DNA of 64,000 nt from Macrostomum hystrix (taxonomy: Eukaryota > Animalia > Platyhelminthes). The notes beneath the pieces were generated by a model that was given only the letters and a program-made list of their open reading frames with translations, did no database searches and was not told where the DNA came from. The DNA is taken from contig CATNEN010000025.1 of NCBI GenBank assembly GCA_950097015.1, forward strand, positions 6,014,001-6,078,000, written 5' to 3'. The translations under genes were made by a program, and so were the position numbers. Below, piece after piece: positions 5,501 to 45,099 of this stretch. The first letter of the stretch is position 1, and each line of letters starts with the position of its first letter.

Positions 5501-8500
5501 TATTCTAACCAAAACGCTTTGGCTGGTCCAGATCAGTTTGCCGACGGATTGTGGCACACGATTGACATGCAGCTTACAACCAATTCAATTATCGTCACGG
5601 TCGATGGTGCGACATATTCCACTGTGCAACTTTTGGACTTGAACTACAACTCTATCACCTATATTGGCTGGTCTCCAGACAGGCTCAGCCTGGTCAACAA
5701 GAACTGGAAGGGCTTCCGTGGCTGCATTAAGCAGGTTTCTGTTCAGAGTCGCATTATTGATTTTGAAAACTTGGACCCAACTAATATGCAGGGTACTATT
5801 AAAAATGGCACTTGCGCTATGCGTGACTTCTGCATGCCAAATCCCTGCAAGCGTGGCGCCAACTGCAGCCAGAACTGGGACGAGTTCTTCTGCAACTGCC
5901 CTGAAGGCTACAGAGACAGTGCAGTCTGTCACGAGTCAACTTATTTTACCTCCTGCTCTGAGATGCAGCTTCTTTACCCAACTATTAGCGAGAAGAACAT
6001 CACTATTGACATTGACGGCTCGCAGATTTTGGATCCGATTAAGGTCAGCTGTGTATTCCGGGACAACATAGTTCGAACTCTGGTTAATCACACCGCCAGG
6101 CCTGACACAGTGGTGCGTCAATCATACATCATGATTTTTTTAAGTTTATTTGTCTGTTCTGTTATGCTTTGGCTAAGAGATTAGAACTTCGGACTCAGGG
6201 AAAACAATTTCGTGCAATTAAAAAAACTGTGTCCTTTCAGCAAGACACCTTCTTTTTTGCGAAATTTTAACCAGGTGTAGAATGGGTGCCTGCTTGGACA
6301 GCTGTACAGTCATTGGTTGCGCCGCATTGTAGCTGTGACTGTGCCACTGGCTGTACTATCTGACCCAACTGGCTAAGGTGTCATTTCTATATTTATTACA
6401 TCTCTATGCTAGTCTATGGGTTGTAGCCTTGTGGTTAGAGCATCGGACTAACGACTTAAGGGTCGGGGGTTCGGTTCCCCACTCCACTTGACCATTTTGT
6501 GTTCTTTAGCAAGATGGTAAATTCTGATTTGCTTCAGTTCGCTAAGCTATAACTGGGTAGCAGCATTAGCAGTGGTAATTGCGGATTTAGGGTAATTCAG
6601 ACAAATACTTTCTCGAGTCAAGCATACCGAACATAAACATATAATTATTGCTATTGTTTCTCTCGCATTACAGGTGGACGGCTTCCAATTGCCTGGATCC
6701 TTCATCTACACCGTCAATTATCAGACATCGACCCTGTCCCTAGCCGAACTTGTTCGCCGCAGCGTCTCCTGTCGCCAAATGATCAACTATAAGTGTCGCA
6801 ATACTCGCCTACTCAGTAGGCCCACACTAGGCGGCACAACATTGACTAATCGGGCCTGGTCCTGGTGGATCTCAAGGCGCGGACAGCCTCGCTATTATTG
6901 GGGCGGCTCGGCGCCCGGCATTCAACGCTGCGCCTGCGGCGTCACTGGCACCTGTCAGCGAGGCGCAGTATGCAACTGCGACAGCTTCTCCGACACTGTG
7001 GACTCCTCCGATTATCAGCAGGATACGGGCTACTTCACCTATAAGGAAGATCTGCCAGTAACTCAGCTTAGATTTGGCGATACTGGTAGTACGGCCGATT
7101 TAAAGCAGGGCGAATTCACTCTAGGACCTCTGGAGTGTACTGGAGATACTCTGTTTGATAACACAGTCACCTTCAGAAAAACTGACGCCACTATTGAATT
7201 GCCGTCGATCTATTCTGAGACGGAGCTGGACGTGCGCTTCCTATTCAAGACTACCCAGACTGACGCAGTGTTTTTCCAAATCTCCGGCAATAAGACTGGA
7301 CACTTTTTAGAGGCTCGTTTGAAGCGTGGGCGCGAGATTCAATTCTCATTTAATGCCGGCTACGGTGTCTTGTCGCTTAGCTCGGTGTCCTTTAGCAGTA
7401 GTCCTGGCGAGAGTCAGGTCACGGTTATTTATAATGATAACGAGTGGCATATTGTGCAGTTTGAAAGAAATCGCAAAGAATTCACTCTGCGCGTTGACCA
7501 GGTGATTTTGATTCACATTATTAGTATATAAATTTCAAATTTCATTGCTGATTTAATACTTGTACTTTTCTCTTGACATATTGCTTCTTGATCCCATCTC
7601 TCCCGACACCTGTCTTCACGGGAGTACGTGGATTACTGGCCAGGAAAACAAGAAAACTGTTTGTAGAGGATTGCTTGCGGGAGGATTGCTTGCGGGAGGA
7701 TTGCTTGCGAGAGAATTGCTTGCGAGAGGATTGCTTGCGAGAGGATTGCTTGCGGGAGGATTGCTTGCGAGAGAATTGCTTGCGAGAGGATTGCTTGCGA
7801 GAGAATTGCTTGCGAGAGAATTGCTTGCGAGAGGATTGCTTGCGAGAGAATTGCTTGCGAGAGAATTGCTTGCGAGAGGATTGCTTGCGGGAGGATTGCT
7901 TGCGAGAGAATTGCTTGCGAGAGGATTGCTTGCGAGAGAATTGCTTGCGAGAGAATTGCTTGCGAGAGGATTGCTTGCGAGAGAATTGCTTGCGAGAGGA
8001 TTGCTTGCGAGAGGATTGCTTGCGAGAGAATTGCTTGCGAGAGGATTGCTTGCGAGAGAATTGCTTGCGAGAGGATTGCTTGCGAGAGAATTGCTTGCGA
8101 GAGGATTGCTTGCGAGAGAATTGCTTGCGAGAGAATTGCTTGCGAGAGGATTGCTTGCGAGAGAATTGCTTGCGAGAGGATTGCTTGCGAGAGAATTGCT
8201 TGCGAGAGGATTGCTTGCGAGAGAATTGCTTGCGAGAGGATTGCTTGCGAGAGAATTGCTTGCGAGAGAATTGCTTGCGAGAGGATTGCTTGCGAGAGAA
8301 TTGCTTGCGAGAGGATTGCTTGCGAGAGAATTGCTTGCGAGAGGATTGCTTGCGAGAGGATTGCTTGCGAGAGGATTGCTTGCGAGAGAATCGCTTGCGA
8401 GAGAATTGCTTGCCAGAGGATTGCTTGCAAATGCTAGCTCTTATCCGCTTAAAATAGGCAAGCACTGCGAAAAAAGCATCGTTTAGCAAACAGTCCTTCC

Positions 8501-11500
8501 GCAAGCAATCCCCTTTGACCCATCTTCGCTGACACCCTTTCCTACCGCAGGCACCCACCTCGTCGGACACCGATCGCTACTAACACCCTAGTCCCCACTT
8601 CTCCTATAGTCACCTCTCGACACCTATTGACAAGAATGTTATTCTACTCCACAGGATGAAATCCGTCGCGATCGTGAGCCGATCGATCAGGCCTTCCAGT
8701 TTTTGAAATTCGACAGTCCACTGTACGTTGGCGCCACTCAGAACTTCAACGAGGGCTACCTTGGCTGCCTATCCAACTTCATGATTAACGGTGTTGTGCA
8801 AGACCTGCTGGGCATTGTCAGCAGGAGGGAGGTCACCTACGGCGTTCTGCCCGGCTGCCAGCCGCGCTGCCTATCAAATCCTTGCCTAAATCGTGCTGAA
8901 TGCTTCGAGTTTTATTCGCACTATTATTGCGAATGCGGCATCACGCCATACCGAGGCTACATCTGCGGCAGGACAGTCGGCGCCACTTTTAAATCCAGCT
9001 CGGATATAATTAGTATCGACATTTCCCAACCAGCTGGCGCCAAGGGTATCAATACCATAGACGAATATATTCGGATTGGCTTCAAGACCAGGTCTAAGGT
9101 TGGCATCCTGATGCAGATTCGCAACGAAGACATACCGGCCAATAATATGCAAGGCGGGCCGCACGAATCATTAATTGTGCGTATTAACAACGCCGGCGGC
9201 ATCACAGTCGAAATTGATCTTGGCTTCCAATGGTACGAAGTCACCACTAGCCAGTTGGATGTGGATTTCACCAACGATCAGCACCACACTGTGGTTGTGT
9301 ACAGGACAAAGGCTGGCCGACAGGTTAGTGAATTTATATTGTGCTTTTAATCCGAAGCTAACCTAAGTGTTCACATACTTAAATCTTCTAAGAGCACAAG
9401 GAATTTTACACACTCCCAAATTATTAGTTTAAGTTTTGATCCTTCCCAGATCCTCATGTTCAGCTCACAATCTTCCGAGATCCTTATGTTCAGCTCACAA
9501 TCTTCCCAGATCCTCATTTTCAGCTCACAATCTTCCCAGATCCTCATGTTCAGCTCACAATCTTCCCAGATCCTCATGTTCAGCTCACAATCTTCCCAGA
9601 TCCTCATGTTCAGCTCACAATCTTCCCAGATCCTCATGTTCAGCTCACAATCTTCCCAGATCCTCATGTTCAGCTCACAATCTTCCCAGATCCTCATGTT
9701 CAGCTCACAATCTTCCCAGATCCTCATGTTCAGCTCACAATCTTCCCAGATCGTCATGTTCAGCTCACAATCTTCCCAGATCCTCATCTTCAGCTCACAA
9801 AATTCCCAGATCCTCATGTTCAGCTCACAATCTTCCCAGATCCTCATGTTCAGCTCACAATCTTCCCAGATCCTCATTTTCAGCTCACAATCTTCCCAGA
9901 TCCTCATGTTCAGCTCACAATCTTCCCAGATCCTCATGTTCAGCTCACAATCTTCCCAGATCCTCATGTTCAGCTCACAATCTTCCCAGATCCTCATGTT
10001 CAGCTCACAATCTTCCCAGATCCTCATGTTCAGCTCACAATCTTCCCAGATCCTCATGTTCAGCTCACAATCTTCCCAGATCCTCATGTTCAGCTCACAA
10101 TCTTCCCAGATCCTCATGTTCAGCTCACAATCTTCACAGATCCTTATGTTCAGCTCACAATCTTCCCAGATCCTCATGTTCAGCTCACAATCTTCCCAGA
10201 TCCTCATGTTCAGCTCACAATCTTCCCAGATCCTCATGTTCAGCTCACAATCTTCCCAGATCCTCATGTTCAGCTCACAATCTTCCCAGATCCTCATGTT
10301 CAGCTCACAAACTTCCCAGATCCTCATGTTCAGCTCACAATCTTCCCAGATCCTCATGTTCAGCTCACAATTTTCCCAGATCCTCATGTTCAGCTCACAA
10401 TCTTCCCAGATCCTTATGTTCAGCTCACAAACTTCCCAGATCCTCATGTTCAGCTCACAAACTTCCCAGATCCTCATGTTCAGCTCACAATCTTCCCAGA
10501 TCCTCATGTTCAGCTCACAATCTTCCCAGATCCTCATGTTCAGCTCACAATCTTCCCAGATCCTCATGTTCAGTTCACAATCTTCCCAGATCCTCATGTT
10601 CAGCTCACAAACTTCCCAGATCCTCATGTTGAGCTCACAATCTTCCCAGATCCTCATGTTCAGCTCACAATCTTCCCAGATCCTCATGTTCAGCTCACAA
10701 TCTTCCCAGATCCTCATGTTCAGTTCACAATCTTCCCAGATCCTCATGTTCAGCTCACAATCTTCCCAGATCCTCATTTTCAGCTCACAAACTTCCCTGA
10801 TTGTCAAGTTAGGCTTAGAACCTTGTCTAGATTCTAGATCCCAAAGTTTTTGCATTTCTTTAAAACTCCAATAGCGACTAAACAACTTCACTTTGCTAAT
10901 AAAATCCCCTTTCAGGTGAACATTGCCGTTGACGACTATCCGGTGCAGTTTTTCGACTTCTCGGGTATGCTTAGCGCCACCTCCGATACCCGTCTGGACA
11001 ATCCGGCCCGCATCTACATCGGCCGGAATAGCAGTATGGCCGCAGGCTTCGAGGGCTGCATCTACGGAGTGCAGTTTAACAACTTCTTTCCATTGAAAGC
11101 CGCTTTCCAGGAGCCTGCTAATTCTAAGGTTAATATGTCGTCTGGAATTGTGGAGAATTATTGTGGTATCGAAGAAATTCTGCCTATTGATGATCCGGCC
11201 GAAATCAGGTGAGCTTAGTATTCCATCATTAGCATCATTAATAAACCATAATCTTCTACATCCTCAGAGTACGGCGTTAATCTTCCCAGATCCTCATATT
11301 ATGGTTTTGATTCTCCCAGATCCTCAGAGTATGGTTTGAAATCCTCCCACATCCGCAGATTATGGTTTGAAATCTTCCTGCATCCTCAAATTATGGTTTG
11401 AAATCCTCCCACATCCGCAGATTATGGTTTGAAATCTTCCCAGATCCTCAAATTATGGTTTGAAATCCTTCCAGCTCCTCAAATTATGGTTTGAAATCCT

Positions 11501-39700: not shown

Positions 39701-39728
39701 CTATCTGCACTACTTTGATCAGCATTGA
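36708..39728 (+). CDS. Uncharacterised protein, paralog B, exons 36708-37295, 38066-38527, 39339-39728
   Basis: Same exon structure and phases as paralog A, intact frames and GT-AG sites. Confidence 0.8.
37360..38030. repeat. ~21-26-bp minisatellite (CAGCTGAACACCCCATCCCCAAG, with or without AACAGTA), paralog B intron 1
   Basis: Visible tandem. Confidence 0.95.
38581..38772 (+). mobile_element. SINE family 2 (copy 2), paralog B intron 2
   Basis: GGTGGCAGGGCGGTTAACGCG...GTTCGATTCCACGGCGAGGCCACATT, homologous to the other family 2 copies. Confidence 0.8.
39052..39212 (-). mobile_element. Internally deleted SINE family 1 copy
   Basis: The tail, 3' end and tRNA-like head match 111-419, but about 140 bp of the centre is missing. 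Confidence 0.8.
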
Positions 39729-40019
39729 TTTGATTTGTTGGATTTAACAAATATTGCGCCTTTATTCCAGATCATCTTATTAGCCACTCGTCTTTTACTG
39801 TAAGAATACTTTGTTACGCGCCTAAAAGTCTATTCCGGTTAATCGAATTTTTAAACTTCCGATTAATGTAAATCTTAATTGTGTTCCATTTTCTGATTGT
39901 TTCTTAGAAACTTGATTATTCCATAATTGAATTCGCTTCGTTGAAAACGGCGCTCTTGCTATTTCTGTAGAAACTTCTCTCTTAAAGCGCAAAATAGCTC
40001 ACCGTTTCTTCTGTTTTTG

Positions 40020-41315
40020 TTCTGAAGCTGGGATATCTTTCAGTTTCTTAGAAACTTATTTTCTGAAGCTGGAATATCTTTCAGTTTCTTAGAAACTTAT
40101 ACTCCGAAGCTGGGATATCTTACAGTTTCTTGAAAACTTATATTCTGAAGCTGGGATATCTTTCAGTTTCTTGGAAACTTATATTCTGAAGCTGGGATAT
40201 CTTTCAGTTTCTTAGAAACTTATATTCTGAAGCTGGGATATCTTTCAGTTTCTTGAAAACTTATATTCTGAAGCTGGGATATCTTTCAGTTTCTTGGAAA
40301 CTTATATTCTGAAGCTGGGATATCTTTCAGTTTCTTGGAAACTTATATTCTGAAGCTGGGATATCTTTCAGTTTCTTAGAAACTTATATTCTGAAGCTGG
40401 GATATCTTTCAGTTTCTTGGAAACTTATATTCTGAAGCTGGGATATCTTTCAGTTTCTTAGAAACTTATATTCTGAAGCTGGAATATCTTTCAGTTTCTT
40501 GGAAACTTATATTCTGAAGCTGGGATATCTTTCAGTTTCTTGGAAACTTATATTCTGAAGCTGGGATGTCTTTCAGTTTCTTGGAAACTTATATTCTGAA
40601 GCTGGGATATCTTTCAGTTTCTTGGAAACTTATATTCTGAAGCTGGGATATCTTTCAGTTTCTTAGAAACTTATACTCCGAAGCTGGGATATCTTAAAGT
40701 TTCTTGAAAACTTATATTCTGAAGCTGGGATATCTTTCAGTTTCTTGGAAACTTATATTCTGAAGCTGGGATATCTTTCAGTTTCTTAGAAACTTATATT
40801 CTGAAGCTGGGATATCTTTCAGTTTCTTGGAAACTTATATTCTGAAGCTGGGATGTCTTTCAGTTTCTTGGAAACTTATATTCTGAAGCTGGGATATCTT
40901 TCAGTTTCTTGGAAACTTATATTCTGAAGCTGGGATATCTTTCAGTTTCTTAGAAACTTATATTCTGAAGCTGGGATATCTTTCAGTTTCTTAGAAACTT
41001 ATATTCTGAAGCTGGGATATCTTTCAGTTTCTTGGAAACTTATATTCTGAAGCTGGGATATCTTTCAGTTTCTTAGAAACTTATATTCTGAAGCTGGAAT
41101 ATCTTTCAGTTTCTTGGAAACTTATATTCTGAAGCTGGAATATCATTCAGTTTCTTGGAAACTTATATTCTGAAGCTGGGATATCTTTCAGTTTCTTAGA
41201 AACTTATATTCTGAAGCTGGAATATCTTTCAGTTTCTTGGAAACTTATATTCTGAAGTTGGGATATCTTTCAGTTTCTTAGAAACTTATATTCTGAAGCT
41301 GGAATATCTTTCATC
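40020..41315. repeat. 41-bp minisatellite (TTCTGAAGCTGGGATATCTTTCAGTTTCTTGGAAACTTATA), about 31 copies
   Basis: Period of 41 counted by hand. Related to the XPA intron array. Confidence 0.96.
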
Positions 41316-42399
41316 AGTTTCCGAAAGTTGTAAAAGTTTACAAAGTTTGTAACTTTTAAGCGTCTTATTGTACGAGTATATTTTCACTATTTTAATCGCA
41401 TGAACCCATTAAGTGCTTTTACACTATACATTTTTTATTAACCAACCATTTGCTTGTCACGATAATATATATTGTGTAAGTTAGCAGTAAGTAAAGGTAT
41501 TTTTATTTATTGAAAAAGCACTTTATTGAGTCAGTTTTGTTTCATTATTCATTATCTATATTTATTGCGTGCTTCAATGATGTTTTTTAGATTTTATAAA
41601 ACAAAATATGGATTTGAATCGAATCCATTCGCCCACTTTACAATAGTTGCAACAACGTTCTTTATGTGCAATAAAAGCTTTTCTATACTCCAGTTTAATT
41701 GCGATTTTAAAGAAAAATAAATCAGTTTTGATTTCAATTGAAAGCAGTGTAGACTTTAATAATTTGTAAAATATATTACCAATTCGTTGACTAGGCGGTA
41801 TAACGATGTATTCTTAGTTACTATAGACGGTCAGGACCTAAGCCTAAAGTGAATAAGGAACATTGATTTCCGCATGATTGGTGCACTTTTAGCCACAGTT
41901 AAACGCTCTGTTATATGACAGGTGGTTAGTTGCTAGGCAAATAGACTTTAGTGTCCGCGCACATGCATACTCGTAATAGCGTTGTTAGAAACTTTATCTT
42001 ATCTCGCATCCTTCTAGGCCCATTTTTAAAGCTGCGAGTTGGTTTTCGTGTTAGTGGTTTTCTGTCTTCAGTATCTGGGGGGTTTCTATGTGGACTGGAA
42101 GCCAAATTTGGTTGTGTTTTAACTAGCCCTAGTGCGGCACAGTTTGCCAATCTGCGCACATTGTGTGTAGATTGAATTATATACAAGTTAAATGTGGAAA
42201 TGCAGAGCGATTAGTGTATTGATAGGTCGAATGTACAAATTTAGATTATTAATGGTATACAAAGTGCTATGAAAGTCAACGCGGCTAGCCATGTAAGTCT
42301 GTACACATATGGGTAGAGATGATAAAAAAGTGAAGATCCGTACACGCATCGGTAAGGACTTTTCATGCGTCTTTACGATCAGTACACAGATAGATGTAG

Positions 42400-42780
42400 A
42401 TCTGTACACAGATAGATTGACATATGTACACAGATTAAAAGTATATCTGTAAACACAGAAGAGTAAACACTGGAATAGTTAACAAATAGCAGCGTGGATG
42501 TGTACACAGATAGAAGTAGATCTATACACAGATAGATTGACATATGTACACAGGTAGCTAGGTAGATCTGTACACAGGTAGCTAGGTAGATCTGTACACA
42601 GGTAGCTAGGTAGATCTGTACACAGGTAGCTAGGTAGATCTGTACACAGGTAGCTAGGTAGATCTGTACACAGGTAGCTAGGTAGATCTGTACACAGGTA
42701 GCTAGGTAGATATGTACACAGGTAGCTAGGTAGATATGTACACGGATAGCAAGGTAGATCTGTACACAGATAGGTAGACC
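42400..42780. repeat. 24-bp minisatellite (ACACAGGTAGCTAGGTAGATCTGT) just upstream of the XPA acceptor
   Basis: Visible tandem; 8-aa period in the ORF track. Confidence 0.92.
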
Positions 42781-42815
42781 AGTGCACATTCCATTCGCCC
42801 AACCCGCGCCCGCAG

Positions 42816-44672
42816 CCTCTGACCCAGGAGCAGCTCGCGCGCAGTGAGCGCAACCGTCAGGCGGCCCTCCTGCTGCGTCAGTCAAAGCAGCGCCTACGCG
42901 ACCTTCAAGAGAAGCAGCCGTCGCAACAGTCAAAGATCGGTGGCGGATCCGCAATCGCCGTCGCCGTCGGCTTCGGCGGTACAGTCGGCGCTGCCACTGT
43001 CGACTCGCGCGCCGGCTTCCTCTACGACGAAGACGATGACGGCGTTGTCGGTGGCAGCGGCAAGCGGCGCGAGCGTCGCCTAGTTACGGAACCCGCGCCG
43101 CTAGTCGACCCCAACGAGTTAGTCTGCGCCGACTGCGACAAGCCTTTCAATTCGTCGTTTCTATTCGACAGATTCGACTTGCGAGTCTGCGACGGCTGCT
43201 ACGAAGCCAAACGAGAGGAGGCCTATGGCCTCATCGCTCGCAGCGATGCCAAGTCGCGCTATCTATTGAAAGACGGCGATCTGGACAGGCGGGAGCCAGT
43301 TCTGCGCTGCTTGCTGCGGAGGAATCCTCACAATCCAAGGGGCGGGGATATGCGCCTCTATCTGGAGGCCCAGGTGGGGGTCCGCTGTTAACAGGAGATT
43401 AGATTTATGAGTAGAAACGAGGTAGTCTTTCAGTTCATTTCAGTTTTCGTTTCGGCCTTCGGTTTCTTAAAAAAAACTTTTCTAAACCTACAGCTTTAGG
43501 TTTTTTTTAATTGTCTTCTGAAGCTGGAATGGCTTTAAGTTTCGTAGAAAGCTCTCATCTCTAGTTGGAGTAGCTTTCAGGTTCTTAAAAACATTTCTTC
43601 TGAAGCTTGGATAGCTTTCAGTTTCTAAGAAAATTCTCTTTTGATGCTCTTAGAAGCTTTAAGGGAATGTACCGAGGGAATAGCTTTCAGTTTCTTAGAA
43701 ACGTCTATTGTAAAGCTGGAATAGCTTTCAGTTTCTTAGAAACGTCTCTTGTAAAGCTGGAATAGCTTTCAGTTTCTTAGAAACGTCTCTTGTAAAGCTG
43801 GAATAGCTTTCAGTTTCTTAGAAACGTCTCTTGTAAAGCTGGAATAGCTTTCAGTTTCTTAGAAACGTCTATTGTAAAGCTGGAATAGCTTTCAGTTTCT
43901 TAGAAACGTCTCTTGTAAAGCTGGAATAGCTTTCAGTTTCTTAGAAACGTCTCTTGTAAAGCTGGAATAGTTTTCAGTTTCTTAGAAACGTCTCTTGTAA
44001 AGCTGGAATAGTTTTCAGTTTCTTAGAAACGTCTCTTGTAAAGCTGGAATAGCTTTCAGTTTCTTAGAAACGTCTCTTGTAAAGCTGGAATAGCTTTCAG
44101 TTTCTTAGAAACGTCTCTTGTAAAGCTGGAATAGCTTTCAGTTTCTTAGAAACGTCTCTTGTAAAGCTGGAATAGCTTTCAGTTTCTTAGAAACGTCTCT
44201 TGTAAAGCTGGAATAGCTTTCAGTTTCTTAGAAACGTCTCTTGTAAAGCTGGAATAGCTTTCAGTTTCTTAGAAACTTCTCTTCTTTAGCAAGCATAACT
44301 TTAAGTTTCTAAGAATCTTCTTCTAAAGCTGAGACTAGATCTGCACAGTTAGAGACGAGGTCATAAGAGACCAACGAGTTTTCTCTCCTGTCCCAGGTGG
44401 CCCAGCGCGCCCTGGACGTGTGGGGCTCGGAGGAGGCGCTGTCCGAGGAGCTGGACAAGCGGGCCGCCAGCAAGGACCGGGCCAAGAAGCGCCAATTCGA
44501 TCAGCGCATGCGAGAGCTTCGGCTGCACGTGCGTTCTAGCCTGGCCCCGAAGCGCGAGTATCGGCACGAGCATCGCTTCGGCGACGAGGAGCCAGTAGGT
44601 GGCGACAACGCCGACGAGTATTGCCGCACCTGCCTGGACTGCGGCTATCAGCAGACCTTCTGCAAGATGTAG
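42816..44672 (+). CDS. XPA: DNA repair protein XPA, exons 42816-43373 and 44397-44672; start codon not present in these exons
   Basis: N-terminal PLTQEQLARSERNRQAALLLRQ, DSRAGFLYDEDDD (similar to the XPA GGGF acidic motif), zinc finger CADC...CDGC, KSRYLLKD.DL, RNPH....DMRLYL..QV..RAL.VWGSEE and C-terminal HEH.FG...C..C...KM. Confidence 0.93.
43680..44280. repeat. 41-bp minisatellite (GCTGGAATAGCTTTCAGTTTCTTAGAAACGTCTCTTGTAAA) in the XPA intron
   Basis: Period 41; same family as 40020-41315. Confidence 0.96.
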
Positions 44673-45099
44673 CGCCGGCATTTTTTTCACTGCGACTGCG
44701 ACTTTTTCTAATACGAATATATAGCGTTTATTTTTTTGTGCAAATTATACTCACCTCACTACTCTCAGTAGCAGTAGTAGTCAAATTGTCTTGTACTTTT
44801 GCTTTAACACAAAATACTTTCAATGTTTGACGTGTTCTCATGAGCCTACTTCCAAAGGCAGTTAATGATAATTTGCTTTGGTGCATCTCAATTGACTAAG
44901 TTTGTTTCTAGACAATTTCTTACTTTTAAATATCTACTGCTGTTGTAATTGTAGGTATTGTTTATCCTGTGTAAATATAGAAAGTGAAAACCTCCTTTTT
45001 TACTTTCAAATCATAATAAGCTTTTGTTCAGAAAATGTGGATTTGAAGTTTTTTGTTTTTTTAACAATCAGCTTTGTACAAAAATGAAAGCTTGAATTT

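What the first reader, a model, noticed from the sequence alone, without database searches (positions are those of the whole stretch)
42783..42860. XPA has no genomic start codon; its conserved N-terminus begins at a phase-0 acceptor, suggesting the AUG comes from a spliced leader
Seen: the XPA frame opens at CCGCAG|CCT CTG ACC CAG GAG (42816), giving PLTQEQLARSERNRQAALLLRQ, the conserved XPA N-terminal helix. No in-frame ATG occurs before the zinc finger, and all four nearby AG acceptors (42782, 42815, 42827, 42833) are phase 0. The one strong upstream ATG-bearing donor I found (MGRDD...ATCG|GTAAGG, 42309-42351) is phase 1 and does not fit. Established: flatworm spliced leaders end in AUG, which can act as initiator Met (shown in schistosomes). 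Inference: the mRNA reads SL-AUG-CCT-CTG, so translation of this core NER gene would depend on trans-splicing.
Basis: partly seen in the sequence, partly recalled or inferred. Interest (0 to 1): 0.78.

Follow-up and report, generated by a model that had tools for sequence, protein, structure and literature searches.

The report
XPA start codon from spliced leader
This flatworm's DNA-repair gene XPA has no start codon in its own DNA, and RNA data show that its message gets one from the AUG ending the trans-spliced leader, a mechanism already known in flatworms.

Summary
The window holds a two-exon XPA gene (42816-43373 and 44397-44672, + strand).

- **No genomic start:** an in-frame stop lies at 42771-42773. 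There is no in-frame ATG until codon 179, which is after the zinc finger.
- **RNA evidence:** transcript contigs from three public runs are spliced across the intron. Each begins with TGCGAAGACTCAATTTATTGCAT, then G at 42815, then CCTCTGACC. That tail equals the last 24 bases of the published 35-nt Macrostomum lignano spliced leader (SL).
- **Trans, not cis:** the leader is not encoded anywhere in the window.
- **Resulting message:** it reads SL…AUG-CCU-CUG, giving M-PLTQEQ….
- **Conservation:** the M. lignano orthologue (74% identical) has the same acceptor and also lacks an ATG. NCBI calls it "partial", starting exactly at PLTQEQ.

Translation from the leader's AUG is inferred here. It was shown in Schistosoma by Cheng et al. 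2006, as cited in PMC9851317. This is a new example of a known mechanism. The scan had already found the same thing on other DNA of this genome. Interest is modest.

The parts
39729..42815 (+). Outron or intercistronic region between the stop of the same-strand upstream gene (39726-39728) and the XPA trans-splice acceptor. It is 3087 nt, of which about 1650 nt is tandem repeat.
   Evidence: ORF list. Tandem repeats at 40020-41313, 42377-42455 and 42497-42777. No RNA contig covers 42760-42814.
42771..42773 (+). Last in-frame stop codon (TAG) upstream of the XPA reading frame.
42796..42815 (+). Pyrimidine-rich tract (14 of 20 bases) ending in the CAG trans-splice acceptor. The AG is at 42814-42815.
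   Evidence: The SL junction falls here in three RNA runs. The homologous CAG acceptor is present in M. lignano L002.
42816..43373 (+). XPA exon A, 186 codons. It holds the N-terminal helix aligned to human XPA residues 26-46, the acidic GF motif, the C4 zinc finger and the start of the DNA-binding domain. It has no ATG of its own before codon 179.
   Evidence: Covered end to end by RNA contigs.
43374..44396 (+). Phase-0 GT..AG intron holding a 41-nt satellite (43677-44331).
   Evidence: The contigs' loose end after 43377 equals 44401-44430, with GTGG shared by both sides.
44397..44672 (+). XPA exon B, 91 codons plus the TAG stop, ending in the conserved …CGYQQTFCKM.
   Evidence: It is 76% identical to the C-terminus of M. 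lignano XPA.
44673..44935 (+). 3' UTR, roughly 240-260 nt. The end is inferred only from contig lengths.
   Evidence: Contig lengths of 1097-1119 nt minus the leader tail and the two exons. This is an inference.

Best explanation
The window comes from a Macrostomum flatworm that is not M. lignano itself. Its XPA pre-mRNA is trans-spliced. The spliceosome joins the SL RNA's leader exon, which ends …UUGCAUG, to the CAG acceptor at 42814-42815, and everything upstream is discarded as an outron. The mature message of about 1.1 kb has no 5' UTR other than the leader. The leader's final AUG is the first AUG on the message and sits directly in frame: AUG-CCU-CUG-ACC. The genome encodes no other usable start, so this AUG is the initiator for a 278-residue XPA (M + 186 + 91).

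Shown here: the SL-exon junction in RNA, the reading frame, the lack of a genomic ATG, and the same architecture in M. lignano.

Inferred: that ribosomes start at the leader's AUG, and that XPA is co-transcribed with the upstream same-strand gene as an operon-like unit.
For: 1. **RNA junction.** Contigs from X3, X4 and X5 carry a 22-23-nt leader tail fused at 42815/42816 and are spliced across the intron.
2. **Leader identity.** The tail is identical to the 3' end of the published M. lignano SL (PMC8629364). [quoted passage not shown]
3. **Trans origin.** The leader is absent from the 64-kb window.
4. **No other start.** There is a stop at 42771 and no in-frame ATG before codon 179. The earlier ATGs are out of frame with short ORFs. 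Starting at codon 179 would lose everything that aligns to human XPA residues 26-185, including the zinc finger.
5. **Conservation.** M. lignano XPA is 74% identical. Identity starts exactly at the acceptor, with 32 identical residues from PLTQEQ…, while the sequence just upstream differs (NPRP vs TSL). NCBI model PAA60043.1 is 'partial' and starts at PLTQEQ. Locus L002 has …cactGCAG|CCG, no in-frame ATG and a stop 12 codons upstream.
6. **SL tail in the M. lignano assembly.** Two other M. lignano copies read …cactCATG|CCG (L001) and …caTGCATG|CCG (L003), that is 4 and 6 bases of the SL tail at this site. That assembly was polished with RNA-seq (PMC5730564).
7. **Precedent.** All reported flatworm SLs end in AUG (PMC12582326). 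More than 40 S. mansoni cDNAs need that AUG to start translation (Cheng et al. 2006, as summarised in PMC9851317).
Against: - Initiation at the leader's AUG was not measured; there is no ribosome profiling or peptide evidence.
- The AUG context (UUGC-AUG-C) has no purine at -3, so some leaky scanning is conceivable.
- All three junction-bearing runs come from one study. They are assembled contigs, which drop rare isoforms and cannot show alternative 5' ends.
- The fourth run (X1) covers only 42907-43142.
- One M. lignano gene model (PAA92718.1) joins an upstream exon to the same acceptor in cis.
Confidence: 0.85

Rival explanations
1. A cis-spliced upstream exon supplies the real start codon, and the SL form is a by-product. 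Candidates are the reader's ATG|GTATAC at 42252-42254, or a read-through from the upstream gene.
For: In M. lignano, one annotated model (PAA92718.1, 400 aa) splices a donor TTG|GTAAGG inside the upstream gene's last exon (L002:6768) to the XPA acceptor (L002:9582) and starts at an upstream ATG. Acceptors shared between cis- and trans-splicing are common in flatworms (PMC12582326).
Against: - No contig in three runs shows such a join; all end in the leader.
- The 115-residue extension of the M. lignano model is an out-of-frame reading of the upstream gene. In the window that frame holds stop codons.
- The homologous donor in the window is GCAAGG, not GTAAGG.
- The other M. lignano models are 5'-partial at or near the acceptor.
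Confidence: 0.06
2. The message is SL trans-spliced, but translation starts elsewhere. It could start at the next in-frame AUG (43350, codon 179) or at a near-cognate codon such as CUG at 42819, so the leader's AUG is not the functional start.
For: The leader's AUG context is weak at -3 (read directly from the sequence). Near-cognate starts supplied by SLs have been reported in other phyla (PMC9851317).
Against: - The leader's AUG is the 5'-most AUG and is in frame.
- A start at codon 179 would remove the zinc finger and the motifs that align to human residues 26-185, yet these are under clear conservation between the two species.
- Leaky scanning would first meet three out-of-frame ATGs.
Confidence: 0.05
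3. The gene is a decaying copy that lost its start codon and makes no protein.
For: There is no genomic ATG. M. lignano models are flagged partial.
Against: - The 277-codon frame is intact across two exons with canonical splice sites.
- It is transcribed and correctly spliced.
- It is 74-76% identical to M. lignano, with conservative changes and all four zinc-finger cysteines present.
- The same ATG-less layout is kept in another species.
Confidence: 0.02

Closest known systems
SL-donated initiator AUG in flatworms (Cheng, Cohen, Ndegwa & Davis 2006, J Biol Chem 281:733; called 'slORFs' in PMC9851317)
   Same: The leader ends in AUG. It is joined at an AG acceptor directly in frame with a conserved ORF that has no start of its own. 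The mRNA then has no 5' UTR beyond the leader.
   Different: The species and gene differ: a free-living Macrostomum and XPA, rather than Schistosoma cDNAs. Translation from the AUG was tested there and not here.
SL trans-splicing and operons in Macrostomum lignano (Wudarski 2017, PMC5730564; Ustyantsev & Berezikov 2021, PMC8629364)
   Same: The leader tail is identical. The acceptor is a CAG. The intergenic region is rich in repeats. XPA is a conserved gene, the class they found enriched among trans-spliced genes.
   Different: - Those papers do not discuss the leader's AUG as the start codon of particular genes.
- The acceptor here (CCGCAG) departs by one base from their YTNCAG motif.
- The distance to the upstream gene is 3.1 kb, or about 1.4 kb without tandem repeats, which is above their 1-kb operon threshold.
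XPA / Rad14 nucleotide-excision-repair scaffold
   Same: It has the XPA_N C4 zinc finger, the XPA_C domain, an N-terminal basic helix and an acidic GF motif, all aligned to human XPA. The total length is about 278 residues against 273 in human.
   Different: The N-terminus is about 18-25 residues shorter than human and begins right at the conserved helix. The start codon is not encoded in the gene.

Membership tests
XPA/Rad14 | C4 zinc finger (CX2CX17CX2C; Pfam XPA_N) | tested here: met
   PF01286, E 8.1e-9, above the curated cut-off. The sequence CADC-x17-CDGC is read directly.
XPA/Rad14 | XPA_C DNA-binding domain next to the zinc finger | tested here: met
   PF05181, E 2.6e-17. Aligns to human XPA chains 28ke_N and 1xpa_A.
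XPA/Rad14 | N-terminal helix and acidic GF motif. In human XPA these bind RPA32 and ERCC1; that assignment is from my own knowledge. | tested here: met
   Query residues 8-186 align to human residues 26-185. 'ragflydeddd' aligns over 'GGGFILEEEEE'. Binding itself was not tested.
SL-donated start codon (flatworm slORF) | The organism's spliced leader ends in AUG | tested here: met
   The contig tail ends …TTGCAT plus G. The published Macrostomum SL ends …TTGCATG.
SL-donated start codon (flatworm slORF) | The mature mRNA carries the leader joined at an AG acceptor, and the leader is not encoded nearby | tested here: met
   Junction at 42815/42816 in three runs. No leader copy in the window.
SL-donated start codon (flatworm slORF) | The leader's AUG is in frame with the conserved ORF, and no other in-frame AUG precedes the essential domains | tested here: met
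   Phase-0 junction. The first genomic in-frame ATG is at codon 179.
SL-donated start codon (flatworm slORF) | Translation actually begins at the leader's AUG | not testable with these tools
   This needs ribosome profiling, N-terminal proteomics or a reporter. It is known for S. mansoni only (Cheng 2006).
SL-resolved operon (downstream gene) | Same-strand upstream gene at a short distance (repeat-adjusted, under 1 kb in M. lignano) | tested here: inconclusive
   The upstream gene is on the same strand and ends at 39728. The gap is 3087 nt, or about 1.4 kb after removing tandem repeats.
SL-resolved operon (downstream gene) | Co-transcription with the upstream gene | not tested
   The evidence is indirect and from M. 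lignano only: the gene name 'Mlig004330g2', a read-through cis-spliced model, and conserved gene order. No reads call was left for this species.

The most novel reading that the evidence does not exclude
XPA's dependence on the leader's AUG may be an old, conserved feature of the genus. It would make expression of a core repair gene strictly conditional on trans-splicing, possibly tied to the stem-cell bias of trans-spliced genes. In addition, the CATG and TGCATG found in place of the acceptor in two M. lignano copies might be real rather than polishing errors. In that case they would show leader sequence being written back into the genome from cDNA and hard-wiring the start codon.
Probability: 0.1. 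Interest if true: 0.55.

Novelty: new member of a known kind. Interest (0 to 1): 0.3.

Why it matters
- **Annotation.** Gene finders and databases label such proteins 'partial' or add false N-terminal extensions. Both errors are seen for M. lignano XPA. The protein is in fact complete once the leader's AUG is counted.
- **Biology.** In at least two Macrostomum species a core nucleotide-excision-repair gene cannot be translated without trans-splicing. This adds a clean, conserved, RNA-supported case to the short list of genes that need the flatworm leader's AUG.
- **Limits.** It does not open a new question. The mechanism has been published since 2006, and this scan has already reported it elsewhere in this genome.

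Tried and rejected
1. **Leader in the window.** I searched the window for the leader (29 nt, up to 3 mismatches) to see whether it could be a cis exon. There were no matches.
The candidate exons at 42252-42254 and 42309-42351 have no RNA support, because the contigs stop in the leader. Reads were laid only on 42760-43500, chosen to stay clear of the long tandem repeats on either side. Joints to far upstream exons could therefore appear only as loose ends, and the only loose end was the leader.
3. **Look-up of P0001.** An exact look-up of the UniProt M. lignano model P0001 found no contig. The NCBI models did.
4. **Upstream gene.** A Pfam scan of three exons of the upstream gene found nothing.
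5. **Literature on XPA.** A paper search for XPA plus spliced leader found nothing on flatworms.
6. **The 400-aa M. lignano model.** I considered it as evidence for a genuine longer XPA and rejected it. Its extension is an out-of-frame reading of the neighbouring gene.
7. **Steps not run.** I did not run the large protein search or a structure prediction, since the family is not in doubt.

Full report
**Observation**

The + strand of the window holds a two-exon XPA gene.
- Exon A runs from 42816 to 43373 (186 codons, donor CAG|GTGGGG).
- Exon B runs from 44397 to 44672 (91 codons plus TAG).
- Exon A carries Pfam XPA_N and XPA_C above their curated cut-offs. It aligns to human XPA residues 26-185.
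- Exon B is 76% identical to the C-terminus of M. lignano XPA.

In this frame the last upstream stop is TAG at 42771-42773, and no ATG follows it. The first in-frame ATG is at 43350 (codon 179), after the zinc finger. Three earlier ATGs are out of frame and stop within 7-15 codons.

One more phase-0 AG (42829-42830) was overlooked.

**What the RNA shows**

One search for runs and one lay of reads were allowed. The run search found six runs from two studies. I laid X3, X4, X5 and X1 on 42760-43500. I chose this stretch to lie between the tandem arrays, because the tool turns away stretches with long repeats.

In X3, X4 and X5, one contig each (1097-1119 nt) matches 42815-43377 with 0-1 differences.
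- Each contig continues after 43377 with letters that equal 44401-44430. The intron is therefore removed and these are transcripts.
- Before 42815 each carries 22-23 loose letters: (T)GCGAAGACTCAATTTATTGCAT.
- With the G at 42815, which fits both the genomic AG and the leader's ATG, the RNA reads …TTGCATG|CCTCTGACCCAG.

The published 35-nt Macrostomum lignano spliced leader is CGGTCTCTTACTGCGAAGACTCAATTTATTGCATG (PMC8629364). The tail is identical to its last 24 bases. A contig stopping about 23 nt into a sequence shared by thousands of transcripts is what a 31-mer assembly graph would be expected to give (my inference).

The leader is not encoded anywhere in the 64-kb window, so it arrives in trans. 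Nothing lies on 42760-42814 in any run. X1, from the second study, covers only 42907-43142 and says nothing about the 5' end.

**Organism and conservation**

The nearest protein is M. lignano XPA at 74% identity. The window is therefore from another Macrostomum species. Leaders are reported to be highly conserved in the genus (PMC10468722).

Identity with M. lignano begins exactly at the acceptor. There are 32 identical residues from PLTQEQ onward, while the residues read from the DNA just upstream differ.

The five M. lignano database entries are telling:
- PAA60043.1 is 'partial' and starts at PLTQEQ.
- PAA60049.1 is 'partial' and starts five residues later, at QLARSE. This matches the AG equivalent to 42829-42830.
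- Two UniProt models start TSLQPLTQEQ without a Met.
- PAA92718.1 has a 115-residue extension.

M. lignano gene boundaries were set from mapped leader-bearing reads (PMC5730564).

At the DNA level, locus L002 has …cactGCAG|CCGCTAACC, no in-frame ATG and a stop 12 codons upstream. The gene order upstream gene - XPA - phosphodiesterase is kept in both species.

**The long M. lignano model**

Its exons map to L002 at 6001-about 6066, 6490-6768, 9582-10151 and 11121-11414. The donor at 6768 (TTG|GTAAGG) lies inside the coding part of the upstream gene's last exon, and the extension is read in the wrong frame of that gene.

In the window the same frame has stop codons, and the homologous site is GCAAGG. 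I therefore take that model as a sign of co-transcription in M. lignano, not as a real longer XPA. It does not rescue a cis start codon in this species.

**Mechanism**

- Shown: the leader is spliced to the acceptor at 42814-42815, and the junction puts the leader's AUG directly before CCU CUG ACC.
- Shown: the genome offers no other start that would keep the zinc finger and the N-terminal motifs.
- From the literature: all reported flatworm leaders end in AUG (PMC12582326). In S. mansoni that AUG is in frame in 28% of trans-spliced transcripts, and more than 40 cDNAs need it to start translation (Cheng et al. 2006, as summarised in PMC9851317).
- Inferred: ribosomes start at this AUG here, giving a 278-residue protein.
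- Inferred more weakly: XPA is the downstream gene of an operon-like unit. The gap to the upstream gene is 3087 nt, or about 1.4 kb without tandem repeats. The 1-kb repeat-adjusted threshold used for M. lignano is lower than that.

**Rivals**

- A cis exon with its own ATG (0.06).
- A start elsewhere on the trans-spliced message (0.05).
- A dead gene (0.02).

None has support in this species. Contigs cannot exclude rare isoforms.

**Comparison and novelty**

This is a member of the known class of leader-donated start codons. Every sequence-level feature was tested and met. The translational step could not be tested.

I found no paper on XPA in this respect. The scan itself had already reported the same mechanism for other genes of this genome (finding s1-316733). 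It also holds an untested sister claim for NAA40 in this window (s1-402534).

I rate it as a new member of a known kind, with an interest of 0.3.

Each exon was searched by reference. The joined coding sequence (leader ATG + exon A + exon B) was never built, typed or searched.

Noticed in passing
L001:5995-6003, L003:2978-2988, L002:9574-9584 (M. lignano, GCA_002269645.1): At the XPA acceptor the three M. lignano copies read cactGCAG|CCG (L002), cactCATG|CCG (L001) and caTGCATG|CCG (L003). Two copies therefore carry 4 and 6 bases of the leader's tail in the genome assembly in place of the acceptor. L001 and L002 have no other difference in the 142 nt upstream. The assembly was Pilon-polished with RNA-seq (PMC5730564), so a polishing artefact is the likely cause. 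A real cDNA-mediated conversion is not excluded.
   Followed up: partly
window 42497-42777; L002:9265-9515: In both species a tandem array with the core AGGTAGAT, which resembles a 5' splice site, ends 40-70 nt upstream of the XPA trans-splice acceptor. The unit is 24 nt here and 31 nt in M. lignano. Whether it has any role in the outron is unknown.
   Followed up: partly
window 40020-41313 and 43677-44331: Related 41-nt satellites (…AGCTGGRATAKCTTTCAGTTTCTTRGAAAC…) fill both the gap upstream of XPA (31.6 copies) and the XPA intron (16 copies). M. lignano has different satellites at the same two places.
   Followed up: no
L002:6001-11414 (PAA92718.1): The 400-residue M. lignano 'XPA' model is a read-through from a cryptic donor in the upstream gene's last exon. 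Its first 115 residues are an out-of-frame reading of that gene, so it is an annotation artefact.
   Followed up: yes
L003:3001 (PAA60049.1); equivalent to window 42829-42831: One M. lignano XPA model starts 15 nt further in, at QLARSE, behind another phase-0 AG. This hints at alternative in-frame leader acceptors. In the window's species only the 42815/42816 junction was seen.
   Followed up: no
window 43094: A C>G difference appears in runs X5 and X1. It is at the third position of a proline codon, so it is synonymous. It is likely an allele or a strain difference.
   Followed up: no
No reads call was left to test it.
   Followed up: no
Only the last 23-24 nt were seen here, so the length is unresolved.
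   Followed up: no
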